This document shows positions 28,281-62,419 of a stretch of 64,000 nucleotides of DNA, one piece after another. The stretch's first letter is position 1. The number at the start of each line of letters is the position of its first letter. The notes below the pieces were generated by a model. It searched no databases. It was not told the DNA's origin and saw nothing but the letters and a program-made list of their open reading frames with translations. The position numbers were made by a program, and so were the translations under genes. Location: the IMG/VR virus record IMGVR_UViG_3300043411_001777, positions 142,090 through 206,089 of that record; one strand, written 5' to 3'.

Positions 28281-28909
28281 TTCCTGAGCCCCTTTTTAAC
28301 GGACGCGTGTATCTGAGCTATCAGCTCATTCCTTACTAACTGAAATATACGCTGTTTAGCTTTGGCAATCGCTCGTGGCAGAAAGGTGAACTTAGCGATC
28401 CCCGGGTGAATCCAGGCATCCGACATCTTCATCGGCGCTGAGCGAAAAATGATTTGACCATTCCGACCCTTAAGTGGGACGATCAAAGGCAGGCGATTAC
28501 CCCGCCCAATACGCCCCCGTCTTCGTTCGGAGGGTGTTATCCGATAACGTTCAGGGTGCTGCTTCTTAGCCTCTTGTGTGAGCCAAGGCATTTTCCTGGA
28601 AGGAATGTTGCTTTTCGTCAACTGTACAATCCCCCAGAAATTGGATTTGATGGTGACCGTCCGCTCTCCAGTAATCTCATACCAGAATGCCTTATTCAAA
28701 GCGAGAGGGCGCTTTATCGGCTTTGTGGGGTCAGCGCCTTCCCGAGGCGCACGCTTTAGTGACCACCCGCGTTTAGCGAAGTCAGCTTTGATCTCCGCAA
28801 TCAGAGTGCTAATCAACACCTTGCCTATACGGTGTAACAGCTCATCCCCAAGGTCAATGTCTAACTTACCTGACCACTGGCCCGCATAAACCGAGCGGAG
28901 GGTGCTCAC
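28277..28909 (-). CDS. Tail completion/neck protein (HK97 gp10-like), basic
   Basis: C-terminal WIHPGIAKFTFLPRAI resembles gp10-type proteins; start moved to GTG 28909 (GTGA overlap). Confidence 0.55.
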   Translation of the reverse strand: MSTLRSVYAGQWSGKLDIDLGDELLHRIGKVLISTLIAEIKADFAKRGWSLKRAPREGADPTKPIKRPLALNKAFWYEITGERTVTIKSNFWGIVQLTKSNIPSRKMPWLTQEAKKQHPERYRITPSERRRGRIGRGNRLPLIVPLKGRNGQIIFRSAPMKMSDAWIHPGIAKFTFLPRAIAKAKQRIFQLVRNELIAQIHASVKKGLRK

Positions 28910-29187
28910 CCATGGTCCTTCTGCCACGTTGGCATAGCTTTTTTGGTGATCTGCATGCAATATGCAGAGTTGTACTTGCCATGGATCTTTTGCACCATCT
29001 CAAACAAAGCCTCACCCGGAGAATCACCCTCTCCTGAAAAGGAGCTATGGGTTCCATGCGTGCCGAAAGCGGCAAACCACCGCCCATTCTTAAACTCAAA
29101 CGTGGTCCCGCCCAAAATGCTAGTATCGTAAGGAACCCCAGCTCGTCGGGCCATAAAGGCATTTGCCACTTTTACTGCCATTTTCAT
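28906..29187 (-). CDS. Hypothetical protein with N-terminal KVA tag
   Basis: MKMAVKVANAFMARRAG; coupled at both ends. Confidence 0.65.
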   Translation of the reverse strand: MKMAVKVANAFMARRAGVPYDTSILGGTTFEFKNGRWFAAFGTHGTHSSFSGEGDSPGEALFEMVQKIHGKYNSAYCMQITKKAMPTWQKDHG

Positions 29188-29933
29188 AGCCCCCCCAGAT
29201 CATATTGATGATAGGCACTTCTCAGACGAGAAATATCCTGAGGGGGCAAATCCCCTCCCTTTTTAATGGTCGCCGCACTCGCTTCTATGAAGGTCAGCAA
29301 AGCCCTATCATTTTTGGCCCTAGCAGCACGCCAAAGCTCGCGCAAACCTTCCAAAAAGTTCGGCACGTTGTCGATCTTAGTTGAAGGCTTAGGAGCTGGC
29401 TTCTGTGCCCGTGCAACTAACGTCTCAAGCAATTGAACTTGCTTGAGAGTCAAAATCCCACCCCCCGTAAGCTTCTGGTGGAAATCACATAGAATTGGCT
29501 CATTCTGCCAATCTGCACGGCTTTCGATACGCTTCTTCAAGTCCGAAATGTAGCGGTCCTGGTCCTCAATCAAGGCCAAAGCATCGTAAAAGCCGGCCGA
29601 CTTGGTGTAGGCTTCCTGCATTCGATCGAAACCATCCCGCCACGTCTTCTTCCAGTTGATGGTGCGCTTGAAATGCCCCTGGCCCTGGGCCTTTCTGTTG
29701 AGGGTCCGCTTGGTCGCCGTACTGACCAAAGCCAGCTTCATAGAAGCATCCCCTCGACCCATGGCGTCATCCTTTGACCCAATGGTACTGGACAGCGCCA
29801 CCGCTACATCCGGGGCTATAGGAAGCCAGTAAACACCCGTGGTTCCCGGCTTCATTTTGACAGGCCCCTTGAGGGGGAGTGTCTTAATCCATAGCTCCAA
29901 CTCTTCTCTGGTGATTTGAACGTAAGTGCTCAT
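29184..29933 (-). CDS. Hypothetical protein
   Basis: 249 aa, ATGA overlaps on both sides. Confidence 0.7.
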   Translation of the reverse strand: MSTYVQITREELELWIKTLPLKGPVKMKPGTTGVYWLPIAPDVAVALSSTIGSKDDAMGRGDASMKLALVSTATKRTLNRKAQGQGHFKRTINWKKTWRDGFDRMQEAYTKSAGFYDALALIEDQDRYISDLKKRIESRADWQNEPILCDFHQKLTGGGILTLKQVQLLETLVARAQKPAPKPSTKIDNVPNFLEGLRELWRAARAKNDRALLTFIEASAATIKKGGDLPPQDISRLRSAYHQYDLGGL

Positions 29934-32900
29934 CGCGAACCCCTGATAAACAGTGATGCCAAGCGGCGGGCAAGCTCCTCACCATTTTCATACTGAGCCA
30001 GCTCGTCTTCCTCTTCGTATCCAGTCGGTGGCTCTTCCTCAGGGGGCTCCCAGCCCTCCAAAGACCGTGCAATATCCTCAGGTGCTTCGTCCGCAGGATC
30101 CCAACCGTCTTCATCTTCCCACGGGCCCGAACGCTCCCGAACCCCTTCCTGGGGAGCCGCATCCGTAATTGGAGCCCCGTCCGGAATTAGAGTGCCATCC
30201 GGCGTAGCATATGGGATACATGCCTCATACAGGAACTGCGAGCTAATCCCAAGCGTGGGGTGCGGAATGTCTAACAAGGTACAGCGATTCTCAGCTCTAG
30301 TGATTGCCACATAGGCAAGGCGACGCTCACCCCACAAATCCGGGCCTTCTCCCGCCGTGCCGGATTTCCCACATCTCGGGAACCGACCGCCCACAACAGG
30401 GACGTACATATGAGGAACCTCCAGACCCTTCCAGCCGTGCATGGTCAGGATCTGAACAGCATCCCGGCTATAGGTCTCTTCGTCTTCCTCTGTGCCAACG
30501 GACAGTTTCTCATTTGCACGCTGTAGCTTGCGGACATAATCCATCGCCGAAGCCATGGACTCATGGTTCTCAAGCAGGCCGATTAGAGGCTCGACAGGAC
30601 CGAGGGCTAGGGTTCTAATCTGCTCCTCCGTGACCTGAACCACCTCGCTCTCAGCCAAGAGCAATGCCATCTTCTCTTCGTCCTCAGAAACAGCCTCCAT
30701 CATCGATTCGATGATGGTTTTGCCCTCAAAACCCCTTAGATCCAGAATTTGATTGAGGATTTCTTTGGGGGTGCCTTGGAAAGAGGCAACCTTTGCCAGA
30801 TTCTCGGTGTACTCCGCAAGTAGGTCATTGTAAGACCAACCACGATCGCCACGATTCTTGGAGGGGTAAATCACATTGACCCCTCCGTTAATCAACCACT
30901 TCAACCAATTCTGAGACTGGGCTTTATCCAACAGATTTTGAAGTAGGGAATCTCCGGAAATGCGCGTCTTGGGGAACTTGGTTGCGGAAACAACGATCTC
31001 GTTAACTTCTTCCTTCGGGCCGTCCACACCCAACTCCGCCAAAGTCAACCACTGCACGAGCCCCTTGGTGAGAGGATCTCCGAAGAAAGACACTGGGGAA
31101 CGGAAAGGAATGCCTTTCTTAAGCATTTCCAGCCCGTAGTGGAAAGCCTCAGCATTAGTCCGAACCGCTATACCGAAGTCAGAATACCGGGTGTGCCCAG
31201 AGGACTCGTCCTGAACCAACTCAGCAACCTGAGAGGCCACGTACTTTGCAGCATCTTCAACGGCCGGCTGACGGACCGTTTCAACACGCCCCTCGTCCTT
31301 ACGCTCAGGATTTGCCTTGCAGACAAGGGGGATCCTGTTTTTATTGTGCTGAACAAGACGCTGCGCCGCCTCGACAATCTGCTTACCAGAACGGTAATTC
31401 GTATCCAAAGACTTGGTGACGAAATCACCCCCCTTAAGATCCGAAAGTGCTGTAAATTGCTCAGGATTTGCCCCGCGGAAGGCATAAATTGCCTGCGAAT
31501 CGTCCCCGATCCATGCGTAGGTATCCGCAGTCATCTTCCCATCAGCGCGAGGCTTCAAAGTAGCTGGATCCAGGTAGCCAGCAAGCAAGCCATATAGGTA
31601 ATACTGAACAGTATTAGAGTCTTGCGCCTCATCCACGAGGATGACCTTGAACTTGCGCTGTAGGTTAGCCAGCAGCTCAGGTTGCCCGATTAGGGCCTGA
31701 ACCGTGTCAATGAGAATATCGTTCATATCCCCAATGCCCTGGAAAGCAGCCTCGCCATGTGGGCCTTTTAGCCACTCGTATGCGGCATACACCGCAGCGT
31801 GGACATTCTCCTCTCCGCTGTAGTCTACGGTATCCCCGCCCTCAGAATCTCCCGTCGAAGAAGCGACGTCCTTACCGTGCCAGGCCTCCGTAGGCGAGAT
31901 TGCCAAACCCTTCATTCGTGTAATGTAGGTCTTGAACTCAGATGGGGGGATCGGCTCCTCACCCTTATCCGTCTTACGGACAAGAGGATTACCTAAGTTG
32001 AACCACTCTCCCGCAGGCTGCTTGAAATAGACATACTCGTCTGCCCGACGACCCTTCTTTAGGTCCGGACCCGTGCTTTCTTCTGCCGAAAGACGCTCCA
32101 TTGGATGGTCAACAGCAGCCCTCTTGGGCATCCCACCCACACCGATGTCAAACTGAACCCCCGTCATGTTGAAAATGTCCTGCATCTGCACTTTCTGCAC
32201 AGCAGAAAGACGCGCGGGACTCTTCAGATTGTCCGTCAACTTCCGGTTAATGGCAAACCACTTGCCATCATCCTCGAAATACGACCGGAGAACCCCCTTC
32301 AAGAAAGGATTCTTCATGAGGTGGAGATTTTGGTAAGCCTTGGAAAGGGCCTGGGAAAAGGTCAGCGTATTTGCCGAAGTGTCAAGGGAGTTGTTAGGAG
32401 CTGCCCGTTGCTGGACCTTAGGATTACGTGCCTGACGGGGATCACCCATATGATGGGGGCGGCCCGTCGCGAAGATGTTGGCAAACATGCTCGTTTCAGG
32501 CGGAGGGTTTGGAGCCGCATCATCCGTCATCTTAACCTGCGCCATCGCAAGCTTCAGCAAGGTGGACTCAATCCACTTTTCCCGCACACCCGCGTAACGC
32601 TTCCGTTTGAACGAACCGCCCTGCCGGTTGATGATGTTTCCAGCAATGCTGTGGGAGGTGCCGAAATTGCGTAGCGCCTCACTGTCAATGTTAGACCCGA
32701 AAGTCTGAATGCGTTTGATAAGCTCGTGAGCCGCCTTCCGTGTAAAGCTCGTGGCCAGAATAGCCGTGGAAGGAACCCCCAGCTCAGTCATGTGGTATTT
32801 GACTTTGGAGGCCAGAACACGAGTCTTACCCGATCCTGCGGTAGCTGCGATGAGCGCCTTCCCCCGCACCATCATGGCCTCTTCCTGCATCGGAGAGTGT

Positions 32901-33715
32901 CCAAGCTGCTTACCCGTCTCGGTACGCCAGCCCGCATGTTGCGGGGTGCCTGACACGGCCGCCGACATAACCGCTGAAGGGTCGGGGGACGAGTCCGCGA
33001 TTTGCTGGATAGACTTGATCAGGTCGATCTTCCGGGACTCTAGCTCAGCAGCCTGAGGGGTATTAGGGTCGGTAACACCCAAAGAAGAAGTGACTTCTGC
33101 CAACTCAGAGGCGACGCCCTTAGCGGTTTCTGCACCAGCCATGATTTGCTCGGTCTCCGATACCGGGGTGCCTGCAAAGGCGGCTGCATCGATTAGCCAA
33201 TTACGGATAGTGGACAAATCGCCTGAAACGAACCTAGAACCGGCTGCCTTATTCAAGCGACTTGCGGGGTTCTCCTCTTGAGAGACGGCACTTAGAGAAT
33301 GTGCCAGAGCGGTTTCGCGACCGGAAGAGAAAATCTCACGCAGTAGACCAACCCGGCTCGAAAGCCAGGGGAAAATTTCCATTCCCGCCTGTGAGATATT
33401 CCGAGCCCTTTGAAAGACTGGGGCCGGCAAACGCGTAACACGCACCGCAGGCATCAGAACCGGGTTCTTGTCAGCAAGCGGGGCCAAGTGCTGCTCGAAA
33501 CCTGCAATCACCTGGGGCAGCCACCGACGGAAAACAGACTCGATTCGATTGTTGAGCAGCTTTAACGTTTTGGTGTCTGAGGGATTAACGATCTCCACCC
33601 ACTCCATAAACGCGTCATAGCCGATGCTCACAACCATCAGGTCAAGCAGACGGGCCGGCAGAACTTCATCCCCGTCCTTAAAGGTACGGCCTACAGCGAT
33701 TTTGTTACGTGTCAA
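29930..33715 (-). CDS. uvrD: UvrD/PcrA superfamily 1 helicase with long N-terminal extension and internal insertion
   Basis: ATAGSGKT, ATSFTRKAA, GTSHSIA, VDEAQD, GDDSQAIYAFRGA, TNYRS, TMHGWKGLE, ERRLAYVAITRA; probable start TTG 33715 behind GGGAG (track start 33745). Confidence 0.9.
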   Translation of the reverse strand: MTRNKIAVGRTFKDGDEVLPARLLDLMVVSIGYDAFMEWVEIVNPSDTKTLKLLNNRIESVFRRWLPQVIAGFEQHLAPLADKNPVLMPAVRVTRLPAPVFQRARNISQAGMEIFPWLSSRVGLLREIFSSGRETALAHSLSAVSQEENPASRLNKAAGSRFVSGDLSTIRNWLIDAAAFAGTPVSETEQIMAGAETAKGVASELAEVTSSLGVTDPNTPQAAELESRKIDLIKSIQQIADSSPDPSAVMSAAVSGTPQHAGWRTETGKQLGHSPMQEEAMMVRGKALIAATAGSGKTRVLASKVKYHMTELGVPSTAILATSFTRKAAHELIKRIQTFGSNIDSEALRNFGTSHSIAGNIINRQGGSFKRKRYAGVREKWIESTLLKLAMAQVKMTDDAAPNPPPETSMFANIFATGRPHHMGDPRQARNPKVQQRAAPNNSLDTSANTLTFSQALSKAYQNLHLMKNPFLKGVLRSYFEDDGKWFAINRKLTDNLKSPARLSAVQKVQMQDIFNMTGVQFDIGVGGMPKRAAVDHPMERLSAEESTGPDLKKGRRADEYVYFKQPAGEWFNLGNPLVRKTDKGEEPIPPSEFKTYITRMKGLAISPTEAWHGKDVASSTGDSEGGDTVDYSGEENVHAAVYAAYEWLKGPHGEAAFQGIGDMNDILIDTVQALIGQPELLANLQRKFKVILVDEAQDSNTVQYYLYGLLAGYLDPATLKPRADGKMTADTYAWIGDDSQAIYAFRGANPEQFTALSDLKGGDFVTKSLDTNYRSGKQIVEAAQRLVQHNKNRIPLVCKANPERKDEGRVETVRQPAVEDAAKYVASQVAELVQDESSGHTRYSDFGIAVRTNAEAFHYGLEMLKKGIPFRSPVSFFGDPLTKGLVQWLTLAELGVDGPKEEVNEIVVSATKFPKTRISGDSLLQNLLDKAQSQNWLKWLINGGVNVIYPSKNRGDRGWSYNDLLAEYTENLAKVASFQGTPKEILNQILDLRGFEGKTIIESMMEAVSEDEEKMALLLAESEVVQVTEEQIRTLALGPVEPLIGLLENHESMASAMDYVRKLQRANEKLSVGTEEDEETYSRDAVQILTMHGWKGLEVPHMYVPVVGGRFPRCGKSGTAGEGPDLWGERRLAYVAITRAENRCTLLDIPHPTLGISSQFLYEACIPYATPDGTLIPDGAPITDAAPQEGVRERSGPWEDEDGWDPADEAPEDIARSLEGWEPPEEEPPTGYEEEDELAQYENGEELARRLASLFIRGSR

Positions 33716-33757
33716 ATCACGTCTCCCTAATGAAAACAGTTCCAACCTGAGGGCGGA

Positions 33758-33769
33758 ATAACCACATTA
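33758..33769 (-). promoter_or_regulatory. Putative late promoter upstream of the helicase
   Basis: (GG)TAATGTGGTTAT. Confidence 0.5.
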
Positions 33770-33771
33770 CC

Positions 33772-34026
33772 CTAATCGTCCTGGTATCTTTCTAGCGCTT
33801 TGGGCAATAGAGAATGACGCTTCACCATGGGGTGAACCCTATCGATGATGAAAAGCTCAGCAAATTGCTGTAGCTCCTCAGGAAGCTCCCGAATGTCTTC
33901 CACAAGATGGTTACGCTCAATTTCCCAACGCAGATTTTCCAAAACGGACACCCAATGGTTGACCGCTTCCCTATCCCAAGAAGCTTTCTTCAACCTTTGA
34001 TTCAAAGCCCCAATTGACTTTACCAT
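33772..34026 (-). CDS. Hypothetical protein (MVKSIGALNQRLKKAS...)
   Basis: ATG 34026 behind GGGAG; leader resembles that of 56917..57162. Confidence 0.65.
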   Translation of the reverse strand: MVKSIGALNQRLKKASWDREAVNHWVSVLENLRWEIERNHLVEDIRELPEELQQFAELFIIDRVHPMVKRHSLLPKALERYQDD

Positions 34027-35426
34027 GTAATGTTCTCCCAAGCCTTTGTTCTACCGCGAGGCTCATCCGCATCAGGGACGTTTGCCTTCTCAGTCCCCAT
34101 CGGCGTGGTGTTCAGCTCGCCAGAAGGGAATGGGCCCTGAGGATCCTGCCAGCCCTCCACCTCTTCTCGGGATGGGCCCCCATCGATAGGCATCCTAGGC
34201 ATATCGATGAACGAAGGCCTAGACTCTGGGTACACCAAATCCGAAGTTCCGTCAATAGGAACCGAATACCGGATGTCAGCCTCGTCGATATAGCCTATCG
34301 TGAAATGCTGTTGCAAAATGTTACCGCGATTAGTAGGTCGACGAACAGGTCCGATCGAATACCGTTCGTTGGTCTGCTTAACAACGAAATCTCGCTGGGT
34401 TAGTAGGGGGCTTGGGCCCATCCACACCTCATAGGAGTGCTGCTTAACACGCCCGCCCGCCAATTGAGTAATCCGACGTTCAGCATCATCCGGAGCGATA
34501 ATAGCATCGAAAGGACCGTCAAACCCACCCACATATGAAGTGCCGTAGCACGTGGGGCAATTCTTTTTAGGCTGCCCTAGGTAATCCCGCTGCCGAGGAT
34601 CCAGCCCACAATCACAGGGGACCCCGCAAACCTTCCGAGTGAAAAGCTTGACCCGCTCCCCACCTTGCTGGAGGATCCAAGCATTACGCCGAACACCCTC
34701 CCGCCAAATGTAATCCAGCTTCTCAATTTCGTGGTTGGAGGTCGGTTGGCTATAACCAAACGGCGTTTCAACCAAATACCCGTCGACATTCGCGACGGTT
34801 GTCAACCGGTAATGGAGATACCGATCCAACCCGGAAACTACAAAGTTCTTCGGGGTGTAGTACACCACCTCCACCGAAGAAGCCGCATTCGGAATAGAGG
34901 CGTTGGTTTCCGTCTCGGTCACAACCTCCCAATCGGGTTGATTTATGAGCGTGATCTCTCCAGATCGGCCGAAAACCGAATCGACGGGGACTTCAACCCC
35001 GTCGATATACAACTCGACATCTTTAGGAGCATTCGCCCACTGTGGCCCATCACCGGGGAGGTGGTGATAGCGTTTGACAATAGTCCCGCGGGTTCGGATC
35101 ACCCAACGGCGATTGTTAGGGGCGTCCCCTTTGTGAACCCAGCCCGTAGACCAATCCACAACCTCACGAATCTCAGCATAATCGAGGCGGTCCCGGAACA
35201 TCGTCCCCTGAACAGGGAATTCGTTGATCCGATGGAAAGGGCCCCGGTCGGAAGACTCCGACCGGTAAATGTTAACCCCCAGGATGTTGAACTTAGCGTT
35301 CTTTGCCAGTGCGGTCGGAGTATCCCAACGGATGTCTAGAATCCCAGGCAAAAAGGGGGAGACCACTACCACGTTTGGGGGTGGTAGTGGGAATTCATCA
35401 CTTGCGGGCTCCCAACCTGTTGCCAA
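34020..35426 (-). CDS. Putative head-tail joining/neck protein with FN3-like N-terminus and Zn finger
   Basis: P-NV...IRWDTP...GVNIYRS (FN3-like); GGERVKLFTRK...CDC...CPTCYGTSYVGG. Confidence 0.55.
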   Translation of the reverse strand: MATGWEPASDEFPLPPPNVVVVSPFLPGILDIRWDTPTALAKNAKFNILGVNIYRSESSDRGPFHRINEFPVQGTMFRDRLDYAEIREVVDWSTGWVHKGDAPNNRRWVIRTRGTIVKRYHHLPGDGPQWANAPKDVELYIDGVEVPVDSVFGRSGEITLINQPDWEVVTETETNASIPNAASSVEVVYYTPKNFVVSGLDRYLHYRLTTVANVDGYLVETPFGYSQPTSNHEIEKLDYIWREGVRRNAWILQQGGERVKLFTRKVCGVPCDCGLDPRQRDYLGQPKKNCPTCYGTSYVGGFDGPFDAIIAPDDAERRITQLAGGRVKQHSYEVWMGPSPLLTQRDFVVKQTNERYSIGPVRRPTNRGNILQQHFTIGYIDEADIRYSVPIDGTSDLVYPESRPSFIDMPRMPIDGGPSREEVEGWQDPQGPFPSGELNTTPMGTEKANVPDADEPRGRTKAWENITW

Positions 35427-35460
35427 TGTAACCTCTTATCTGAGGCCAATTATCGGCATT

Positions 35461-35727
35461 CTAACGCAGCTCTTTACGCACCGTTCCGTCGGCCTCTACT
35501 ACGAAAGGCACGCCGTCTGGGATACCAAGACGGGTAATCCCAGACTCCACCCACGCCCGCTCTTGCTTTCGCGCTTCCTGTAAAGCCAGTCGAAGCTGGC
35601 CTTCCCGCTCCGAAATCAGCCCCAGCTCGTGCACAAACTGTTCAGCTTTGGCATGTGCCTGCCAATAGCCTTCCATTTCTGCCTCGGACAACTGCCCCAT
35701 AACCTCGCCAAGTTTTGGATTCATCAC
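35461..35727 (-). CDS. Hypothetical coiled-coil protein
   Basis: 88 aa, coupled to the MazG-like gene. Confidence 0.6.
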   Translation of the reverse strand: MMNPKLGEVMGQLSEAEMEGYWQAHAKAEQFVHELGLISEREGQLRLALQEARKQERAWVESGITRLGIPDGVPFVVEADGTVRKELR

Positions 35728-36350
35728 GCCTTCCTATTCAGTGAATCGGCTTCCGTAAAGCCTTGAGGATAACGGGCCTTAAGCTTTGCGATGTTGCTGG
35801 CAAGCACTTCCTCTAGGGCCTCCGAAAAAGGCTTGTCGGGGAAGAGGGCCAAAGTCCCCTGAGCCAACATATCCGCGATGACAGAAAGCCGATCGCCAAT
35901 ATCAAACAGCCCAGCCGGATGTCCATGAAAGAATACCTTCTTCTGATAGTCCACATAGCCGGACACAGACACAATCAACTGAGCAACCAACTTAGGAAAC
36001 TCAATTGTCCAAGGAAAAGGCTCCCTGGGAGTGCTTTCCACAAATAGGTGCTTGAGCTTCTTGGTTAAGTTAGCACAAACGTCAGAGAGCTTTAACCCCC
36101 AAGAATCAGCGCAGGTTGCGGCATACCACCACAAGTCGCCCATCTCCAACCGAGCCTTAGCCTTCAGGCTAGAAATTTCCTCCGTACCCATTGGGTCGGG
36201 CCCGAACATCAAAGGCAACACCAGCTCCATCAACTCGCCCGACTCACCGGACAACCCAGTATAAGTCATAATGCGGTAATCCCGCTCCGACAAGTCCTTA
36301 TTCTTGGTCACAATTGCCAATTGCTGATAGCGATCAAAATCTACTGTCAA
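35724..36350 (-). CDS. MazG-like NTP pyrophosphohydrolase
   Basis: YQQLA...GLSGESGELME...EMGDLWWY; KKVFFHGH...NIAKLKARYPQGF. Confidence 0.8.
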   Translation of the reverse strand: MTVDFDRYQQLAIVTKNKDLSERDYRIMTYTGLSGESGELMELVLPLMFGPDPMGTEEISSLKAKARLEMGDLWWYAATCADSWGLKLSDVCANLTKKLKHLFVESTPREPFPWTIEFPKLVAQLIVSVSGYVDYQKKVFFHGHPAGLFDIGDRLSVIADMLAQGTLALFPDKPFSEALEEVLASNIAKLKARYPQGFTEADSLNRKA

Positions 36351-36778
36351 GACTTACCCCCATAAGGAACCCGAACTACATGAGTAAGACCTTCCCACTC
36401 AGATTTAGCTAACGGGCCCACAACTAATACACGAATCTCGCTGTTAAGCATTTTTGCGACCATGTCTTTGGTCCCCTTTCCGCCCGGAAAGGCCACCCCA
36501 ATAATCGTATGGCCCTCTTCACGAAAGACCAAAAGCTTGTCGAGCATAGCGGAATTGCGCACCAGACCCGCAGCGTTACCCAACCGGTCCCATTCAGCCA
36601 TGACCGTAAGAAACGGATACCCCCTTTCCTTAGCCCATAGCTGTGCGAGTCTGTCTGCCCCTTTAGCCCCACCTTCTTGGATAGTGAATGGGGTTTTTGC
36701 ATAAAGCCGATCTAACAGACCCCACACAAAAGACTTATCCGCAAAGTTACGGCCTCCCGTAATCTGACAGTACAACAT
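36347..36778 (-). CDS. SLOG family (YspA/DUF2493-like) protein
   Basis: ITGGRNF...EGGAKGADRLA...AAGLVRNSAML...AFPGGKGTKDM; ATG 36778 TAATG-coupled to thyX. Confidence 0.85.
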   Translation of the reverse strand: MLYCQITGGRNFADKSFVWGLLDRLYAKTPFTIQEGGAKGADRLAQLWAKERGYPFLTVMAEWDRLGNAAGLVRNSAMLDKLLVFREEGHTIIGVAFPGGKGTKDMVAKMLNSEIRVLVVGPLAKSEWEGLTHVVRVPYGGKS

Positions 36779-38070
36779 TACCGGGCCGTAATGGTCTGGT
36801 CGCCACGCCGAACATCCCAATCATCCGGGTCCATATCCACGTGGAGTAACACTTCAGGATGGGTGAATGCGAGATCGCCGATCATATTGTGGATGGCTTT
36901 ACGAAGAGTTGGGTGTACAGCTTTTCCAGACCGTAGCTCCAAAACATACACCGCCGCTGGTAGTCCATACGTGACCTGGAAAGGTACTTTGAACCCGAGG
37001 GGGATGAGATACTGAGAGGCAACATCATCCTCAATCGAGGAAATCAACTCAACCTGCTCAGAAATCAGCGCCTCAGCCTCTGCACGCATTGGCCCGAGCT
37101 GCTCTAGATACCAGGACTCAAACCCCAGATCCGTCGTCAACTTAGGGACTCGGCAGACACCATTTCGGTGGCGCTGAATGTCGCGCCAGGACCCGTAATC
37201 CAACTCCCCTCGGAACGATAGGGATCCAAGCTCCGCCATATGCGCTGGCAATGCCGAACCTCTGGGCCTCGTAATCAGCATTTCGTAGTAGGGCTTTAGA
37301 GCGCCATCATCAATAGTGGACCGGATATCCCACTTCTTTGGAGGGAGAGGCTTATAGCTCCCGTAAGTGGACGCCTCCCAGACAACTCGATCCGGGTACA
37401 ACTTCTCCCCAAAGCTTGATGGGTATTGCTCACGCAATAGTGCCAGGGCGCCAGAAGCCAGCTCCCGCACTTCCTGCAAAGGATGCTGGATCAACAGCCC
37501 TAAATGGTCAGAGGCCTGCCGTAGGTTTGTATGCCAGGAGAGCTGGGTGGTTTTACCAGCCGGAAGGAACCCCCGCAAAATGTCAAAGGTACGAGCTTTG
37601 ATCGCTCGCTCGTATGTGTCCTCTTTCTCAGAGGACTTACGCGGGTATTGAGACCGAACCCACTCCAAAACCGGAGCTTGCTTTTCCGCATAAAAGCGCT
37701 CCCACCTATCAATAATCGTCGTAGCCGTTTGCCCAATCGGGTTAACCACAGGGCGATTCGCCATATCGATATAGCGGGTGGAAGTTTCCTGTCCGGAATA
37801 GAGCGACCAATCCTGAATAGCCTTAGCGGCTAGAATGGAAACGTTCTCGAAAAACAGCGTCGTGGAGCCACAATCCGCAATGGACTTATGCCCATAACCG
37901 ACAACATACTTTTCGACGAATTTGCCCGATCCGACCTTACGGACCTTCTCTAGGTGAGTCTCCACACTCTCTCCGGAACGAGAGTAGAGTGCCTGCACCA
38001 TAGCCAAATCTTCGGAATGAAGGCCGTCCTCAAGAAAGAGGACGGCCTTACCAACTTGCTTCTTGAGCAT
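36778..38070 (-). CDS. thyX: FAD-dependent thymidylate synthase, long tandem-domain type
   Basis: YGHKSIAD, QETSTRY, RGFLPAG, RDIQRHR, ELRSGKAVHPTLR; probable start ATG 38070. Confidence 0.85.
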   Translation of the reverse strand: MLKKQVGKAVLFLEDGLHSEDLAMVQALYSRSGESVETHLEKVRKVGSGKFVEKYVVGYGHKSIADCGSTTLFFENVSILAAKAIQDWSLYSGQETSTRYIDMANRPVVNPIGQTATTIIDRWERFYAEKQAPVLEWVRSQYPRKSSEKEDTYERAIKARTFDILRGFLPAGKTTQLSWHTNLRQASDHLGLLIQHPLQEVRELASGALALLREQYPSSFGEKLYPDRVVWEASTYGSYKPLPPKKWDIRSTIDDGALKPYYEMLITRPRGSALPAHMAELGSLSFRGELDYGSWRDIQRHRNGVCRVPKLTTDLGFESWYLEQLGPMRAEAEALISEQVELISSIEDDVASQYLIPLGFKVPFQVTYGLPAAVYVLELRSGKAVHPTLRKAIHNMIGDLAFTHPEVLLHVDMDPDDWDVRRGDQTITAR

Positions 38071-38072
38071 CG

Positions 38073-38234
38073 TTACTTCGTTTCCTTTGGAATGCCATTC
38101 TCGACAAGAGAACGCAACCACTGCTTGGTGGAAATAGGATTGTCTAACCGTTCAATGTGTTGAAGTAACATCACAACATGCTGTTTGCATTGCAGCAAAC
38201 AGAGCTGCTTTATTTGCTCTCTATCCTCATCCAT
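38073..38234 (-). CDS. Small hypothetical protein (53 aa, MDEDREQIKQLCLLQC...)
   Basis: Translated by hand; fills the gap, stop 2 nt before the thyX ATG. Confidence 0.5.
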   Translation of the reverse strand: MDEDREQIKQLCLLQCKQHVVMLLQHIERLDNPISTKQWLRSLVENGIPKETK

Positions 38235-38243
38235 GACAGAGCC

Positions 38244-38543
38244 TCACTTCTGGCAAGGGCAAGAAGTAGCCAGGGTAAACCAATTCCCGCACTTCAAACA
38301 TACTTGAGGTTGTTGGGCAAACGGTGTAAAGGTGGACGTTTGGACAAACGGCACATTAACCGAGGTTAGGTTAAAGAAGCTGTTGAATTTGTCTGCATAA
38401 TCCAGCAGTATCCGTAGGATATCGGGATTCACATCCCTATTCTCCTTCATCAAAGCCAACTGGGCCCCGACAGCCTCAAACCAAAGAGTGTGGTGCTCGG
38501 ACAAAGACCGAAACACCGTCCCCGAAGACTTTTCATCCGCCAT
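38244..38543 (-). CDS. Hypothetical protein with C-terminal Cys cluster
   Basis: CLKC...CPC. Confidence 0.6.
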   Translation of the reverse strand: MADEKSSGTVFRSLSEHHTLWFEAVGAQLALMKENRDVNPDILRILLDYADKFNSFFNLTSVNVPFVQTSTFTPFAQQPQVCLKCGNWFTLATSCPCQK

Positions 38544-38552
38544 ACAAACCCC

Positions 38553-40883
38553 TTACTTTTCAACCGTGAAATACGCCGAGGAAGCAAAGACGGAAACGAG
38601 CCCGCCATCAGGAACCTCGAAAAAGGTCCCCTCCTTCTCCTCTTTCGAGAGCGCCAAGGCCGGATACTTCTGAGCCAATTCCTCAGCATTCATCACTGCT
38701 ACCCCATCCGGAACCAGCCCCGTTGCCCCAACCTGGAAAACAAGATCCCTAAACCCGGCGTAACAAGAATCGATCCAATTACCGATCTGGCGAAGCTCCT
38801 CATTAAGAGCGAGGACCCGATCGTCAGCGGACATAGCCTTTAGCGCCACGTATTCCTTGTCGAAAAAGGATGCGAATTCCTTATCCATGATGTCGTCCGC
38901 AGCATTAGGCTTGCCCTTCTTAGGAGGCCCCTTTTCTACCGAAACATCAGCATCCCAAATACCGTCCAACGTCGCCTTAACGGGCCCGCCACCCCGCTTC
39001 ATTACATAGCGAGCATCGAAGAAGGCATTACCCGACTTCATCTTGGATGCAGCCGTAAGCTCAACAGTACCCACCACAACCTCAAAAGAGGTACGGGCGT
39101 CCACCTCACCATTAGCGATCGCGTCCTCCAACTTAACGTAAGTATTAGTCGTCGGGAACGAAACGTAAAGGGAGGGGCTCAAGTAATGAGCCTTCAGCTC
39201 GGCAATCTGCTCCGCCGTGTATTCCGTGGACGAACCCTTCAAGGTCGCCTTCAAGAGCTTTTGACGAGCGGTCATCCTGAACAGCTCACGAACATCGTTA
39301 CCAGATGGGAGCTGGGCTGCCTTATCACCCACCACAGGGAATTCAGACAGCGCGATCTTTACGGGCGCGTTCGGGTCAAACCCATCCACAGGCACGAACC
39401 CAGCCTTCGCTAGACAGGCCCAGGCTCGCTTGTTAGACACCTTCACCATTAGGTGAGAAGCATTGACCGCACCATCACCCACAATCGTGTAGGCGCGGAA
39501 ATCCGACAGCTTTAGAGGGATGCCCGCAACCTCATGGATGGGCTTGCCGGTCTTCCGGTTCACCAGCTCAATCGCTTGAGCGATTGTGATGTTTGCCGTC
39601 GGGCTACTGCGGTTCACATCTACAGACGTGACCGACACCCACTCATCAGTCCCAACGGGCTCCGTTTTGAGCGTGGGCTCTTCCAAAGAACCGTCCTCTT
39701 TCCGGATACCCGCAACCCGCTTTAACCCACGACGCTTATAGATAGACTGCAAGTCGGGCAGGTTAATCCGGATGGAATCCTTGTTAGCTTCCAAGATATC
39801 CAGGAAGTCCAACACAGAGGACCCGCCGAACCCAGGAACCCCATAATTACACACCTCGTCGAGAACCGTGTTGAAGACACGGAACTCGCAAGCCTCAGCA
39901 AAGGCCGCCAAATCTGGGTTGGTCAACGCCCGATAATTGTCCAGGGTGAACTTCTTATTCCGAGTCGAACACAGGGCAAACTTAGCCTGATTGATCAGGC
40001 CTTCCGACAAGGAAGCCTTAATGAAGGCACATAGCGCCTTCATATCGATATCCTGAGCGTCGGAAGTTGTTCCCGTCACCTTATAGAAGCGCAGGATTCG
40101 AGCCCCTTCTGGGCTGGCACCCCTAACGGTCAGGGCATTACGGCTTCCAAGAATCTTCTTATCCGCATTTGACACATACACCACAAAATCGGCACCCTCA
40201 GTAGGGATTTCGATTGTGGGTACAGTCTTACCTGCCAACTGACTAAACCCAGCGTGCAAGCCCTCGTATACCTGCTTCGCATTTTTGGCCCGAATCGTCG
40301 ACCCACTCAGCTTGTTACTGATGCTCGCGAGGAACTGAAAATCACAGTAGTCACTGTAACCTATGGTATTGACGAATACTCCGGGGTGCTTTTGGAGAGC
40401 CTGGACGTATAGATCCACGTCCCTACGCTCTGTCGTAGGGGAATAGTCGTTAGCATAACCATCCGTGTGGAGAGAAATGCACGTCAGCTCACCCTCCCGA
40501 ACAAGAGATTCCGCAAGCTTTAGGCTCTGCGAGATACAGGTCATTGCCGTTGCACGAATGCTACGAAGTTCCTTTAGGAAGGAACTGCCCGCCTGCACAA
40601 TTTCGGCTACGGGAACACGGGAGAAATGAAGCTTGACGTCCCCATGAGACGAATAGGAAATGAGGGAGACTAGCATTTCCGGCGTGTGGAATTCTTCCAA
40701 CGTCAGGAGCTTTTCGATCATAACCTTTGCATCATCGATAGAGCCATACATCGAACCAGAACGGTCGATATCGATGATATGGTGGCCGGGTTGAGCCGTT
40801 GCCTGGAGCTGTGGGACAGGCGACTCCACCGCCTGCCAAAAAGAATGGATCTGCCCATCGTACTTCCGAAGTGTAAACTGCAT
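38553..40883 (-). CDS. von Willebrand factor A domain protein (776 aa)
   Basis: MIDAS motifs DRSGS, T, TDG. Confidence 0.8.
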   Translation of the reverse strand: MQFTLRKYDGQIHSFWQAVESPVPQLQATAQPGHHIIDIDRSGSMYGSIDDAKVMIEKLLTLEEFHTPEMLVSLISYSSHGDVKLHFSRVPVAEIVQAGSSFLKELRSIRATAMTCISQSLKLAESLVREGELTCISLHTDGYANDYSPTTERRDVDLYVQALQKHPGVFVNTIGYSDYCDFQFLASISNKLSGSTIRAKNAKQVYEGLHAGFSQLAGKTVPTIEIPTEGADFVVYVSNADKKILGSRNALTVRGASPEGARILRFYKVTGTTSDAQDIDMKALCAFIKASLSEGLINQAKFALCSTRNKKFTLDNYRALTNPDLAAFAEACEFRVFNTVLDEVCNYGVPGFGGSSVLDFLDILEANKDSIRINLPDLQSIYKRRGLKRVAGIRKEDGSLEEPTLKTEPVGTDEWVSVTSVDVNRSSPTANITIAQAIELVNRKTGKPIHEVAGIPLKLSDFRAYTIVGDGAVNASHLMVKVSNKRAWACLAKAGFVPVDGFDPNAPVKIALSEFPVVGDKAAQLPSGNDVRELFRMTARQKLLKATLKGSSTEYTAEQIAELKAHYLSPSLYVSFPTTNTYVKLEDAIANGEVDARTSFEVVVGTVELTAASKMKSGNAFFDARYVMKRGGGPVKATLDGIWDADVSVEKGPPKKGKPNAADDIMDKEFASFFDKEYVALKAMSADDRVLALNEELRQIGNWIDSCYAGFRDLVFQVGATGLVPDGVAVMNAEELAQKYPALALSKEEKEGTFFEVPDGGLVSVFASSAYFTVEK

Positions 40884-40983
40884 ATTGGTGCCTTGTAAGT
40901 TGAGTTATGTCCTTAAGTGGACTTTCAACTTTACCGGACACCCACCACAATCGCACTCAGAACGTTGGTTTTTCAGAGCCACC

Positions 40984-41876
40984 TCAAATGTAAGACCGCG
41001 GAGAAAGTACCCCACGACCCAATCTTGGGCCCATCGCGCTCGTTAATCCGATTCCAAACCGAGGTTGTGAGAGACCCTTAATGTACTTGACGGTCTCTTT
41101 CTTCGTCTCTTTAGCTGATTCCATTCGGCCGTTTGCCAGCTCAGCCAAAGATTGGAATTTGTCTGCCTTAGAGATGTCAAGGCTAACCCCTCCAATACTG
41201 TACGAAAATTCGTCCTGGACCCAATTTACAGCCAAAGCAAACATGGCCCAATGAACAGCGCTCCAAAAGACGGGTGTACGCCACGCAGCTTGCTGTTGAA
41301 CCAATTGGTCAAGTCCGGGGATAAAAGTCCTCGGAGCCTCCATATTCCACCAATCTAAGCCCATCCGCAGGTACAGCTCTAACTCGTAATCCTCCCAGAC
41401 ACGACCGAAAATGCGGTTGTAGCTGCCGATCCTAGCCTCGTGCTCGGGAGGTCTGAAATGATAAAACTGATCAGGCGCCTGGTCCCGAATTAGGATCCTC
41501 AAATCCCTTATAAGTTGAGTAGTTGCAGCGCTATAGCCAACCGTGGATAGCTGCCCCTCTCCAACAACGGTGAATTCCTGAGCCACCAATTGAACCGTGG
41601 ACCCGGCATTCTGTTTGAACGTCCACTTAATCCGATATGTCCCTGATTGGGCGGTAGAAGGCACATGGAAATGCGCGTAGTATTCTCCAACGATTGGATT
41701 TTCCGGAGTCCGAGTTGCGGACCCAATCAACACTTCTGCCTCAGGGGGCCCTACATCCACGAGATAGATCGCATAGGTTATCTCATAAGCGTTTGTGGGG
41801 TTGTCATCGGAATCCTCCAAAAAGATGGTGAGGTCTCCGCGTTCCGTGGTGTCTCCTGGTTCAAACGAGCTGGCCA
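40984..41876 (-). CDS. Head-tail adaptor/neck protein with N-terminal Ig-like domain
   Basis: Beta-sandwich N-terminus (GEYYAHF...GTYRIKW), helical C-terminus with FSYSIGGVSL; ATG 41876 behind AGGGGG. Confidence 0.55.
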
Positions 41877-41891
41877 TTCTTCCCCCTAAAC

Positions 41892-41928
41892 GGAAAAGGC
41901 TTTGTTGGTTCAAAACAAAGCCTTTTCC
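41892..41928 (-). terminator. 15-bp hairpin after the paralogue trio
   Basis: GGAAAAGGCTTTGTT/AACAAAGCCTTTTCC followed by GTTT. Confidence 0.65.
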
Positions 41929-46147: not shown

Positions 46148-46515
46148 TTGGCACTCTCTTTCGCAACAAAGCGATCATAGCTGCTAGTGTCTTTCCCCTT
46201 GGAAGCAGCGAGAGACTTAGCCTCTCGCCAAGAATCCACACGCTCCCCGTCAACGTTAGGGGCAAGAGAAACTTGCCCCCCATACCGTTCTTTCTGGCGG
46301 GTTTCCAGAACCCTATTCTTTTCTTCCATTTGCCGTTTGATAGTCAAATTCTTGCCGAACCAACCATCCCCCCTCAAGACAAAGGCTACTTCTGTCGCTA
46401 TTTTCGGAGACTCCGAAGAACAGCTAGGGCAGAATTGGGCCTCATCTCTCTTGGAAATAGGCAAGGTACGGGAGAATTTCTCTCCACACGGACATGCATA
46501 ATCAAAAGCCGGCAT
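46144..46515 (-). CDS. FmdB-family zinc-ribbon protein
   Basis: MPAFDYACPCG...CPSC...FVLRGDGWF. Confidence 0.75.
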   Translation of the reverse strand: MPAFDYACPCGEKFSRTLPISKRDEAQFCPSCSSESPKIATEVAFVLRGDGWFGKNLTIKRQMEEKNRVLETRQKERYGGQVSLAPNVDGERVDSWREAKSLAASKGKDTSSYDRFVAKESAK

Positions 46516-48660: not shown

Positions 48661-48709
48661 AACTGACGAATCCCCTCGTGGAGGGGATTCCATCAACTAG
48701 AAACCGAAA

Positions 48710-52527: not shown

Positions 52528-52986
52528 TTAAAACCGAACGCGGATCACCCGAACAAAGCCCTCCCGAACAGAAGGAGGCTCCATCGTCAGCTTTTGCGCC
52601 ATCGTAAGGATGACCTCGTCAGGTACCCTGCGATCAACCGTACGCGCCTCGTTGCGCTCCAACGCCACCAGAATCGGGGTTTCCATCAGGACCGCCTCAA
52701 CCGGCACACGTGCGCGCCAGGCAGCCCGCAAAAGCGGTGCCCGACTCATGCGTGTGGTAAAGGTGGCGTCGAAGTACACTGCACCGGCTTCCTTGTTTTT
52801 GGAAACCCAAGTGCTCTTACCTGAGGCCGGGATGCCCACCAGCAAAACCAGCTTACGGACCCGTCGATCAGTCAGCACAGCATCCAACTTGGCCATGCTC
52901 TTACGCCATGCGCTCGCCGCACGCTCTTGCGACCAGACGTACTGGCCGTCCTCAGTATAGAGGTAATGGTCAGGGGAAATGATCAC
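52528..52986 (-). CDS. P-loop kinase, AAA_33/polynucleotide kinase-like
   Basis: GIPASGKST, DATF-x-x-x-x-x-R, RNEAR...RRVP; GTG start overlaps the HAD stop. Confidence 0.8.
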   Translation of the reverse strand: MIISPDHYLYTEDGQYVWSQERAASAWRKSMAKLDAVLTDRRVRKLVLLVGIPASGKSTWVSKNKEAGAVYFDATFTTRMSRAPLLRAAWRARVPVEAVLMETPILVALERNEARTVDRRVPDEVILTMAQKLTMEPPSVREGFVRVIRVRF

Positions 52987-53456
52987 GTACGCACCAAATG
53001 AGGAACACACTCAACCCCGGTGCCCTCCACGAACTTGCAGAAGGACACCAGATGGTCGGGCCGATCCTCCCAAATGTGAACCACGCCAAAATCGAACTTG
53101 CTCAGATAACTCCTGAGTACCGCCAGCTTGAACGTTTCCGTTCTCGTGGAACCTCCAGGAGCTAAATGGACACGATCGAATACCAGCCCGACCGACTTCA
53201 TTAGCTCAGGAACACGCCACCGGAAATTCTTGTCTGTCCTCCCCGTTGCTAGAACGGCCAACACGTTCTGGTCTGCAATAGACCTACGGGCTGCCCGTAC
53301 CGTGGATTGGATCCACATCGGCTCAGGAGGCTCAGGTGGCATGAAGGGCTCTTCCAAGGAATGAGGGTGGGACCACCAATCGCCCTTCCAATCCTCGGGT
53401 TGAGGTGGGGACCGAAGCAATGTACTGTCCATATCATATAGGTGCAATTCAAGCAT
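52983..53456 (-). CDS. HAD phosphatase, Swiss-Army-knife RNA repair type
   Basis: YDMDSTLLRSP, WWSHPHSL, LATGR, FK, WEDRPDH. Confidence 0.8.
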   Translation of the reverse strand: MLELHLYDMDSTLLRSPPQPEDWKGDWWSHPHSLEEPFMPPEPPEPMWIQSTVRAARRSIADQNVLAVLATGRTDKNFRWRVPELMKSVGLVFDRVHLAPGGSTRTETFKLAVLRSYLSKFDFGVVHIWEDRPDHLVSFCKFVEGTGVECVPHLVRT

Positions 53457-54657
53457 GGTCCCTCAGCAATCTTTCAGTCAACCCCCGGTCAAAAAGGGAG
53501 GGGTCCTCTAACAGGAAATCACGAGCTTTCGAAGTCAAAACCCCAATCTGGGGGCCTTTTAGGCTCAATTCTTTGATCAGCCTTGGAAAATCAGCCACTT
53601 TTGCAGGCTGCTTCAACGCATCTAGAAAGGCTTCTGGGCTTTTCAAGCGTGGGAGAATCCTCTGTAACTCGCGTTGCTGCTCGGCAGACAGGAACTTGAT
53701 CCGGTCGTTTAGGGGGACCCCAAGATCCAACAGGTCGAACAGGAGCCCGAGCCGTTGGTTGTTTGACCACCCGGCCAGTGTGGCACGGAAAGCTGGGATC
53801 TCAGTCACCATTTCTGCAACCACATCCAACAGGCCAAGCCGCTTCATTTCAAGCAGCGCCTTTTTAGCGGTCGGCTCCACCAACAAGGTGTGGATTAGTA
53901 GGTCGGAAATCGCGTTGTACGGGACTTTCTTGATAAAAGGCGCGTTTCGTCGAATAGAGGTTTCTGTCTCTTTATCCGCTTTTAGGTTGTATTTGCAGTA
54001 GAATTTGACGGCTCGAATCATCCTTGAGGGGTCATCTCGGAAAGTGATATCGGGGTCCATAGGACATCGAAGCACCCCCTCCTTGATGTCCTGAACCCCG
54101 CACCCCGTGAGATCAATAATGTCGGCCAAATCCGCTTTGTCCGCTACTGAAATCAATTTCATCAAAAGGGTATTGGTGCGAAATTCGCGACGCAAAACGT
54201 CTTGTTCAATCGTGGCAGGCTGAACCTCGGACGGTTTGTACCCCTTGCCTCCCGAACCCCCATATGATTCGGAGCGGGCATTTGCAATTTCGATGTTCTC
54301 CCCGCGCAAATTCGATGAACCGAGGAACCAATCCTCGGTTACAGTTAAGATAGCCACCCCGTAATTATTGGTTGCCAAATTACACTTGGCTGGAATAGCC
54401 AGCATTAACTGTCGAGCCACCCACTCTGAGTCATGCCCCATGGCGATAGAATCAACCACAAGGTCCAAGTCCTTAATGTCCAATCCCAGGATGAGGTTTC
54501 TGGGAGCACCCCCCACCAAGTACACGTACTCTCCGACGGGCTCCCCGGTTTTTGAGCGAGTTTTTTTGGACCACTGCCCTAAAAACCTCATCAATGCACG
54601 AGAGGCATCATCCGTCATCCCCTGCTTTAGGTAGGCATCCGCGACTTTTTTAGGCAT
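53449..54657 (-). CDS. cca: Class II tRNA nucleotidyltransferase (CCA-adding/poly(A) polymerase family)
   Basis: YLVGGAPRN...KDLDLV, ARSESY, DVLRREFRTN, DDPSRMIRAVKF; start ATG 54657 (MPKKVADAYLKQG). Confidence 0.85.
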   Translation of the reverse strand: MPKKVADAYLKQGMTDDASRALMRFLGQWSKKTRSKTGEPVGEYVYLVGGAPRNLILGLDIKDLDLVVDSIAMGHDSEWVARQLMLAIPAKCNLATNNYGVAILTVTEDWFLGSSNLRGENIEIANARSESYGGSGGKGYKPSEVQPATIEQDVLRREFRTNTLLMKLISVADKADLADIIDLTGCGVQDIKEGVLRCPMDPDITFRDDPSRMIRAVKFYCKYNLKADKETETSIRRNAPFIKKVPYNAISDLLIHTLLVEPTAKKALLEMKRLGLLDVVAEMVTEIPAFRATLAGWSNNQRLGLLFDLLDLGVPLNDRIKFLSAEQQRELQRILPRLKSPEAFLDALKQPAKVADFPRLIKELSLKGPQIGVLTSKARDFLLEDPSLFDRGLTERLLRDHA

Positions 54658-59795: not shown

Positions 59796-59919
59796 CCTTA
59801 TCATGGTGAGCGTTTACATCCTAGACAATCGAGCTTGGGTAGCACTACTATGGCGTAACCTGTTGTTGCGACAGCAAGCTAAAGGCCCACAGTACGGTAG
59901 CTTCATGATAGGATAAGCC

Positions 59920-60273: not shown

Positions 60274-60281
60274 GGAAATGA

Positions 60282-61558: not shown

Positions 61559-61698
61559 TCAGCAGCACATGATTGACACATCGGAATCTTACGATTCGGA
61601 CGAATCTCAATCATCGCCTCGTTTCCAGGCGGGAAACCCTTCGTGTTCTCGCAAACCTCACAACCACTTGGACCCTTAACAACCTTGACCTTCTGCAT
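61522..61698 (-). CDS. Small zinc-finger protein
   Basis: CEVC...CQSC; TAATG-coupled start at 61698. Confidence 0.55.
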   Translation of the reverse strand: MQKVKVVKGPSGCEVCENTKGFPPGNEAMIEIRPNRKIPMCQSCAADWNRNRKPSEAR

Positions 61699-62048
61699 TA
61701 GACTACATTCCTGTTCAATGGATAGCGTTTCCGCCACCACTTACGCCAAAAGGGATACGCCAAAAATAGCGCAACTCCCACAAGCGCAGCATAGCTTGCC
61801 TGCAACAGAAAATATACCAGCCAAAAAGCCTCTTTACCTATCCAAAATTTGTTCATCTTGCGATAGCACTCTACAGTCGGCTTTGTCGGCTCCTGGCGCT
61901 CCGCCAGCCGATCTGCAATCTGCGCATGACAGAAACTTAGCAGTACGGCAAGGGAGCCCACAAACTCTACAAAGGCCCCTCCTGTGAGGACTGCCACCGA
62001 AAAAAGCACGACGCCAACCACAAGGGCTTCAAATTGATAGGTTTTCAA
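61698..62048 (-). CDS. Small membrane protein
   Basis: Several hydrophobic segments, basic C-terminus. Confidence 0.65.
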   Translation of the reverse strand: MKTYQFEALVVGVVLFSVAVLTGGAFVEFVGSLAVLLSFCHAQIADRLAERQEPTKPTVECYRKMNKFWIGKEAFWLVYFLLQASYAALVGVALFLAYPFWRKWWRKRYPLNRNVV

Positions 62049-62062
62049 GACCCTTAGACCTT

Positions 62063-62419
62063 TTACGTGTATAGGCTCAGCCGGTGCTTTTTCAACCAGG
62101 CAAGAGCCTCGTTTCCTACTTCAAGGGCCGCAGCGATATCTTGCCGAACCTTAGTCACCCGATTCAAAATCGTAAGCGGGTTTCCAGTCTCATCTGGATA
62201 TGCCACCGTTATGGTGCCGAGTCCGGATTGGCCAACTTCCAATTCAGATACCCAACCCCCACCAAGCTTATCCAAGCCCAGACCAAACTTCGTCCCCAAG
62301 GCATAGACATCCCCAACGGGGATACCTATTGACAGTAGGTACTCTTCCAGAGCCCGAGCTTGGGCCTGTTCCCCAACTTCTACCCTTTGAGCCACCTTAC
62401 GGATTAGTTTTCGCATCAT
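62063..62419 (-). CDS. Hypothetical protein with N-terminal RKVA leader
   Basis: MMRKLIRKVAQRVE; coupled to the ART-like gene. Confidence 0.65.
   Translation of the reverse strand: MMRKLIRKVAQRVEVGEQAQARALEEYLLSIGIPVGDVYALGTKFGLGLDKLGGGWVSELEVGQSGLGTITVAYPDETGNPLTILNRVTKVRQDIAAALEVGNEALAWLKKHRLSLYT

What the first reader, a model, noticed from the sequence alone, without database searches (positions are those of the whole stretch)
28906..62419. Shared basic tag (KVA-x-x-[YF]...[KR]-x-A/G) on unrelated enzymes: candidate capsid-loading and processing system
Seen: KVANAFMARRAG (N-term, ~29137-29172), KVAAAYMRKYAG (C-term of SWIM protein, ~46505-46543), KVAASFLRKAD (between domains of the RelE-like protein, ~48307-48339), KKVADAYLKQG (N-term of the CCA enzyme, ~54619-54651), RKVAQRV (N-term, ~62381-62401) and RRLASLFIRG (C-term of UvrD, ~29939-29968). 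The tag sits only at termini or domain junctions. Related [KR]-x-A sites fall at segment boundaries (NKIA, PKRA, RKQA, FRFA), and two small proteins share the leader KS-x-x-x-LNQR (34026, 56917). Established: T4 and phiKZ load internal proteins through short signals that are removed by proteolysis. Inference: this phage tags a tRNA-repair enzyme, a helicase and a putative RNase for packaging and co-injection with the DNA.
Basis: partly seen in the sequence, partly recalled or inferred. Interest (0 to 1): 0.82.

Follow-up and report, generated by a model that had tools for sequence, protein, structure and literature searches.

The report
Shared peptide tag on huge-phage enzymes
A short basic helix ([KR]-V-A-x-x-aromatic-[LM]) is shared by unrelated enzymes of this 206-kb phage and by hundreds of proteins of related huge phages, where it marks the ends and joints of multi-enzyme 'polyvalent' proteins. 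It looks like a common docking or address peptide, but loading into the virion is untested.

Summary
All six peptides exist where stated. Four are real copies of one motif: orf93 N-terminus, SWIM-protein C-terminus, the p292 domain joint and the CCA-enzyme N-terminus. A model built only from foreign sequences ranks these four first in the 65.5-kaa proteome, each above every one of 200 shuffles at its rank. The helicase C-terminal copy scores as noise but fits its family: 14 of the 29 closest homologues carry the tag within their first 30 residues. RKVAQRV, the '[KR]-x-A sites' and the KS...LNQR pair are noise or unrelated.

Comparison with relatives gave the main result. In related IMG/VR huge phages the window's separate genes are domains of giant ORFs: CCA, HAD, 2H/LigT, InPase, topoisomerase IB, ART-PolyVal and DUF4258. 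These match the 'polyvalent proteins' of Iyer et al. 2017. The tag (mostly P-S-x-x-R-V-A-x-R-[YFW]-L) sits at their joints and termini.
- One relative has 23 tags against 0.7 expected.
- 150 SWIM-family representatives have 105 against 4.2 expected.

Conservation is at peptide level, and the tag forms a helix after a variable linker. I read it as a docking or address helix for effector modules, possibly for virion loading and perhaps later trimmed. That function is inferred, not shown. A protease recognition site is the main rival.

The parts
29137..29172 (-). Tag copy A, KVANAFMARRAG, at residues 6-17 of orf93 (28906-29187). It lies 3-4 residues after the likely start at the second ATG.
   Evidence: It scores 8.5 bits with the foreign-instance HMM, above all 200 shuffles at rank 2. 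The protein is an ORFan, so conservation cannot be tested.
29939..29968 (-). Tag copy F, RRLASLFIRG, a Leu variant at the C-terminus of the 1271-aa UvrD-type helicase (29930-33745).
   Evidence: Pfam UvrD domains. The score alone is noise. However, 14 of the 29 closest homologues carry the tag in their first 30 residues, some as K-L-A-S-x-Y-L-R-K, and P0270 ends in KLASRYLESEDE. The phage's own N-terminus aligns to the tag columns only as a degenerate remnant.
46508..46543 (-). Tag copy B, KVAAAYMRKYAG, one residue before the stop of the SWIM-domain protein (46502-47821).
   Evidence: The orthologous C-terminal tag is present in relatives. 54 of 150 family representatives have it in their last 30 residues. 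It is predicted as the distal end of the last helix, with pLDDT 68-75.
48307..48339 (-). Tag copy C, KVAASFLRKAD, at the joint of p292 (47818-48696). It lies between an N-terminal helical hairpin module and a RelE/BrnT-like (DUF4258-type) module.
   Evidence: Column conservation in 43 homologues is R 0.84, V 0.91, A 0.95. AF2 predicts helix 104-116 at pLDDT about 55 between two confident domains. It scores 9.3 bits.
54619..54651 (-). Tag copy D, KKVADAYLKQG, at the N-terminus of the class-II CCA-adding enzyme (53449-54675). The likely start is at Met7, coordinate 54657.
   Evidence: In three relatives the same position is an internal joint just before the CCA domain of ORFs of 927-1520 aa. Solved cellular enzymes align only from residue 41-48.
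62381..62401 (-). Claimed copy E, RKVAQRV, at the N-terminus of p118 (62063-62419). This is probably not a tag.
   Evidence: It has no aromatic residue at +5. It ranks 8th at noise level and has no homologue in the relatives.
52983..53456 (-). HAD_SAK_1 phosphatase gene immediately after the CCA gene. It is an untagged stand-alone homologue of a domain that is fused to CCA in relatives.
   Evidence: Pfam hit at 1.1e-18. It matches the 919-aa and 336-aa proteins of G001.
19809..41913 (-). Neck/tail structural block around the tagged genes: virion protein p277, tail sheath p1874, tail terminator p400, minor tail protein p468 and head-tail connector p309.
   Evidence: tblastn matches to annotated genes of Tunturiibacter phage Tunturi_5. 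The block is syntenic with G004.

Best explanation
The tag is a clade-specific short linear motif. It consists of a small-residue, Pro/Ser-rich linker followed by a roughly 12-residue basic amphipathic helix: R/K-V-A-x-R-[YFWH]-[LM]-x-[KR]. In this phage it reads K-V-A-x-x-[YF]-[ML].

It marks the boundaries of effector modules that related huge phages string together into polyvalent proteins and that this 206-kb phage encodes mostly as separate genes.

Shown: the motif is real, is selected at the peptide level, is conserved across hundreds of divergent proteins, and is confined to termini and joints of unrelated domains.

Inferred: each copy docks its module onto one common, conserved phage-encoded partner. 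The most likely purpose is to bring the modules together for incorporation into the assembling virion and co-injection with the DNA. The tag may be trimmed afterwards, as the T4 signal is.
For: Reality and selection:
- Foreign-instance HMM against shuffles in the phage's own genome.
- G001 has 23 tags of at least 5 bits in 18 proteins against 0.68 in shuffles; G004 has 14 against 0.57.
- RVA..[YFW] occurs 22 times against 3.5 expected in G001, and 105 times against 4.2 in 150 SWIM-family representatives.
- In 43 p292 homologues the tag columns are about as conserved as the conserved core of the adjacent domain, while the linker before them varies.
- All synonymous codons are used, and the longest nucleotide run shared by two tags is 13.

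Autonomy:
- The same tag flanks CCA, HAD, 2H, InPase, topoisomerase IB, SWIM, DUF4258-like, ferritin-like and helicase domains.
- It is kept at the extreme N- or C-terminus of stand-alone proteins.
- Our helicase has lost the N-terminal copy and carries a C-terminal one.
- It is predicted as a helix that is not confidently packed on either neighbouring domain.

Link to injection:
- The carriers have Pfam domains named for polyvalent proteins, a class proposed to be packaged and injected (PMC5512222).
- Four tagged genes lie in or beside the neck/tail operon.
- Tags are absent from the structural proteins themselves.
- Precedents exist in the T4 capsid-targeting sequence and the P1 DarB N-terminal 30 residues (PMC9024508).
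Against: - There are no virion data. No cultured phage carrying the tag was found, and the scanned 68 kb of Tunturi_5 show no convincing copy.
- Several tags per polypeptide are not needed for targeting alone.
- Most tagged genes in G001 and G004 lie far from the structural genes.
- RNA-repair enzymes and a ferritin-like protein could equally act in the cytoplasm.
- No partner was identified.
- The T4 and P1 signals are N-terminal only.
- In this phage the tag is rare (4-6 copies) and partly degenerate.
Confidence: 0.4

Rival explanations
1. The tag is the recognition or cleavage site of a processing protease that cuts polyvalent proteins into their domains. The protease would be either the zincin-like metallopeptidase found in polyvalent proteins or the prohead protease. 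Terminal copies would then be leftovers or trimming sites.
For: - The tags lie exactly at domain joints of giant ORFs.
- Those ORFs contain HExxH...EAFxE zincin-type motifs (weak local match).
- The phage itself has a 576-aa protein with HELGH and EAFAE motifs, and it ends in RIAALWRRKHGH.
- Iyer et al. 2017 propose metallopeptidase processing of polyvalent proteins.
- The invariant R-V-A could be P1-P1'-P2' for an enzyme that prefers a hydrophobic P1' residue (my inference).
- 8 of 36 tags have S/A-x-E just upstream, as in the AXE motif.
Against: - Whole tags persist at the extreme termini of stand-alone proteins across deep divergence, including helicases for which no fused form was seen. 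Cleavage there would have no obvious purpose.
- The conserved positions follow helical periodicity, and the tag is predicted helical. Protease substrates usually bind in an extended conformation.
- Position -1 is variable.
- No Pfam peptidase family was detected.
Confidence: 0.25
2. The tag docks the modules onto a hub inside the infected cell, not in the virion. The hub could be a phage scaffold that rebuilds a multi-enzyme RNA-repair and anti-defence complex from separate parts, or a host factor.
For: - The cargo is dominated by RNA-repair enzymes that act together: CCA, HAD, 2H and LigT.
- Fission and fusion of the same domains among relatives suggest that they need to be near one another.
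- The tagged genes are dispersed in G001 and G004.
Against: - No hub was identified.
- The cargo also includes a helicase, topoisomerase IB, an ADP-ribosyltransferase and an RNase, a mix typical of injected polyvalent proteins.
- Four of the tagged genes in this phage lie in or beside the structural operon.
Confidence: 0.15
3. The tag is a membrane-targeting amphipathic helix like those of MinD, FtsA or RNase E, or a mimic of the FtsZ C-terminal peptide.
For: - The helix has a basic stripe at positions 0, +4 and +8 and a hydrophobic stripe at +1, +2, +5 and +6.
- It is terminal, behind a flexible linker.
- Copy C, ASFLRKAD, recalls E. coli FtsZ PAFLRKQAD (from memory).
Against: - Membrane-targeting helices are conserved in composition, not in sequence. 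Here R-V-A is nearly invariant over hundreds of proteins.
- The spacing from Val to the aromatic residue differs from the FtsZ peptide by one residue.
- Only copy C shows the resemblance.
Confidence: 0.05
4. The tag is a DNA-level element: a cassette-boundary sequence that promotes recombination of domain modules, or a regulatory site that happens to be translated.
For: The tag demarcates shuffled modules, as the VENN-type motifs of polymorphic toxins do (from memory). Domain order differs among relatives.
Against: Arg uses all six codons and Val four. The longest in-register identical run between any two tags is 13 nt. The four copies in this phage differ at synonymous sites.
Confidence: 0.03
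5. The resemblance among the window's peptides is chance, found by eye after the fact.
For:
- My rough family-wise estimate for a 4-site motif is E of about 1-10.
- Copy E and the [KR]-x-A sites are noise.
Against: - There is orthologous conservation of B, C and D.
- Relatives show genome-wide enrichment.
- The shuffle test with a foreign-only model supports four copies.
Confidence: 0.02

Closest known systems
Polyvalent proteins of phages and conjugative elements (Iyer, Burroughs, Anand, de Souza, Aravind 2017, PMC5512222)
   Same: The relatives' giant ORFs join disparate enzymes in one polypeptide and hit Pfam families defined from that work (InPase PF18823, ART-PolyVal PF18760) plus 2H, HAD and DUF4258. 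They contain zincin-type motifs. They are proposed to be packaged and injected.
   Different: In this window the domains are separate genes. The paper never uses the word 'linker' and, in the passages read, describes no conserved joint or terminal peptide. The tag is therefore an added feature, so far seen only in this huge-phage clade.
T4 capsid-targeting sequence of internal proteins (Mullaney and Black 1996, cited in PMC9024508 and PMC10052503)
   Same: A short terminal peptide shared by unrelated cargo proteins, sufficient in T4 to load foreign proteins, and removed by the prohead protease.
   Different: The T4 signal is N-terminal only, has a different sequence and is followed by an LxE cleavage site (from memory). 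The tag here also occurs at C-termini and internal joints, and no cleavage is shown.
P1 DarB N-terminal capsid-targeting signal (PMC9024508)
   Same: A very large helicase-type anti-restriction protein is addressed to the head by its first 30 residues. Here a 1271-aa helicase family carries the tag within its first 30 residues in 14 of the 29 closest homologues.
   Different: In P1 no consensus is shared among the Dar proteins. Here one consensus is shared by many unrelated proteins. Packaging is proven for P1 and untested here.
Prohead-protease propeptides of phiKZ-like phages (SPN3US gp245, AXE motif; PMC10052503)
   Same: Giant phages with many head-internal, ejected proteins, some of which are processed at a short motif.
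   Different: Cleavage there follows A-x-E and releases N-terminal propeptides. Only 8 of 36 tags have Glu at -1. The conserved part of the tag is a basic helix, not A-x-E.
Encapsulin cargo-loading peptides and microcompartment encapsulation peptides (from memory)
   Same: A short peptide or helix on a flexible linker, at the N- or C-terminus or between domains of unrelated enzymes, which binds the inside of a protein shell. Encapsulin shells share the HK97 fold with phage capsids. One tagged protein in G004 is ferritin-like.
   Different: The consensus sequences differ. No shell binding is shown here.
Demarcation motifs of polymorphic toxins (CdiA VENN, Rhs DPxGL; from memory)
   Same: A short conserved motif that marks the border of exchangeable modules.
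   Different: Those motifs sit only before the C-terminal toxin domain and are linked to cassette exchange or autocleavage. Here the DNA is not conserved, and the tags flank every kind of domain and also sit at N-termini.

Membership tests
Polyvalent proteins (Iyer et al. 2017) | Two to fifteen domains of disparate biochemical activity in one polypeptide | tested here: not met
   In the window the domains are separate ORFs (CCA 408 aa, HAD 157 aa, p292, SWIM 439 aa). The feature is met in the relatives: ORFs of 919, 1411, 1510 and 2130 aa (Pfam). The window therefore holds unfused homologues, not members.
Polyvalent proteins (Iyer et al. 2017) | Domains drawn from the polyvalent repertoire (InPase, ART-PolyVal, 2H, RNases and others) | tested here: met
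   Hits to PF18823, PF18760, PF13563, PF02834, PF10307 and PF14076 in the relatives. The window's genes are homologues at 36-56% identity.
Polyvalent proteins (Iyer et al. 2017) | Zincin-like metallopeptidase for processing | tested here: inconclusive
   HExxH plus EAFxE motifs occur in the G004 ORFs and in a 576-aa protein of this phage. There is no significant Pfam hit.
Polyvalent proteins (Iyer et al. 2017) | Packaged in the virion and injected | not testable with these tools
   The phage is uncultured and there is no proteome. Only gene context in the neck/tail block is available.
T4-type capsid-targeting sequence | N-terminal position followed by a prohead-protease site | tested here: not met
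   Tags also lie at C-termini and internal joints. No conserved LxE or AXE site follows or precedes them.
T4-type capsid-targeting sequence | Sufficient to load a foreign protein into the head | not testable with these tools
   This needs a cultured tag-bearing phage and a reporter fusion.
phiKZ/SPN3US-type propeptide processing | Cleavage after A/S/G-x-E | tested here: inconclusive
   Glu occupies position -1 in 8 of 36 tags, with S, P or A at -2 and -3. It is not general, and no cleavage data exist.
Short linear motif on a flexible linker (docking helix) | An island of conservation in a variable, indel-rich region, independent of the neighbouring fold and occurring on unrelated domains | tested here: met
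   The linker is 0-30 aa before the tag in the SWIM family. Column conservation is. pLDDT is about 55 between confident domains. The tag is found on at least nine domain types.
FtsZ C-terminal peptide mimic | The [IV]-P-x-[FY]-[LM]-[RK] spacing | tested here: not met
   The tag has V-A-x-x-[YF]-[LM], one residue longer. Only copy C resembles the E. coli peptide (sequence; the FtsZ peptide is from memory).

The most novel reading that the evidence does not exclude
RVAxR[YFW]L (KVAxx[YF][ML] in this phage) is a sequence-defined cargo address used by a large clade of huge phages. Under this reading roughly 5% of their proteins are loaded into the virion for co-injection: tRNA-repair enzymes, a DarB-sized helicase, topoisomerase IB, an ADP-ribosyltransferase, an RNase and a ferritin-like protein. 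The injected proteome of uncultured phages could then be read from sequence alone, and the tag could serve as a portable packaging handle.
Probability: 0.35. Interest if true: 0.8.

Novelty: new variant of a known kind. Interest (0 to 1): 0.62.

Why it matters
Which proteins a phage injects with its DNA is known for only a few cultured phages. Even there (P1) no shared address could be recognised.

A conserved, easily scanned tag on unrelated effector modules would do four things:
- It would give a sequence-only way to list candidate injected or co-assembled effectors in uncultured huge phages.
- It would show that polyvalent proteins and sets of small tagged proteins are interchangeable solutions, through fusion and fission around one joint peptide.
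- It would point to one conserved partner protein that is worth finding.
- It would offer a short handle for loading foreign proteins, if targeting is confirmed.

If the tag is instead a protease site, it defines the processing code of polyvalent proteins, which is also unknown.

Tried and rejected
- **Exhaustive pattern enumeration.** This family-wise test was dominated by paralogue families (for example CP.EVMP.W in three proteins) and was too slow for shuffles. I replaced it with HMM-versus-shuffle tests.
- **Small relatives-only models.** They ranked C, B and D first but had no power for single sites. Ranking is partly by construction, because the seeds were chosen with a similar regular expression. 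Only the comparison with shuffles is used as evidence.
- **Nucleotide search in the phage collection.** It found nothing.
- **Searches for close loci of the CCA enzyme, orf93 and the zincin in IMG/VR.** They found nothing.
- **orf93.** It has no homologue among 5.8 billion proteins.
- **p118.** It has none in the five relatives.
- **Pfam and PHROGs.** They are silent for most structural genes. Their roles come from tblastn matches to annotated genes of Tunturi_5.
- **Fold searches.** The two AF2 models gave only non-significant matches: RelE/ParE/HigB/BrnT at E 0.5-2.4 for the p292 C-module, and nothing for the SWIM domain.
- **Sequencing runs.** They hold only short assembled contigs, identical across copy C and the part of copy B they cover, so no polymorphism test was possible.
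- **Testing whether the zincin binds its own C-terminal tag.** I wanted to fold the 576-aa protein for this, but too few homologues were available for an alignment.
- **Ideas rejected.** A Shine-Dalgarno or DNA motif (AAGGT) behind K-V was rejected because the spacing and codons vary. A ClpX-type degron was rejected because C-terminal copies are not at the very end.
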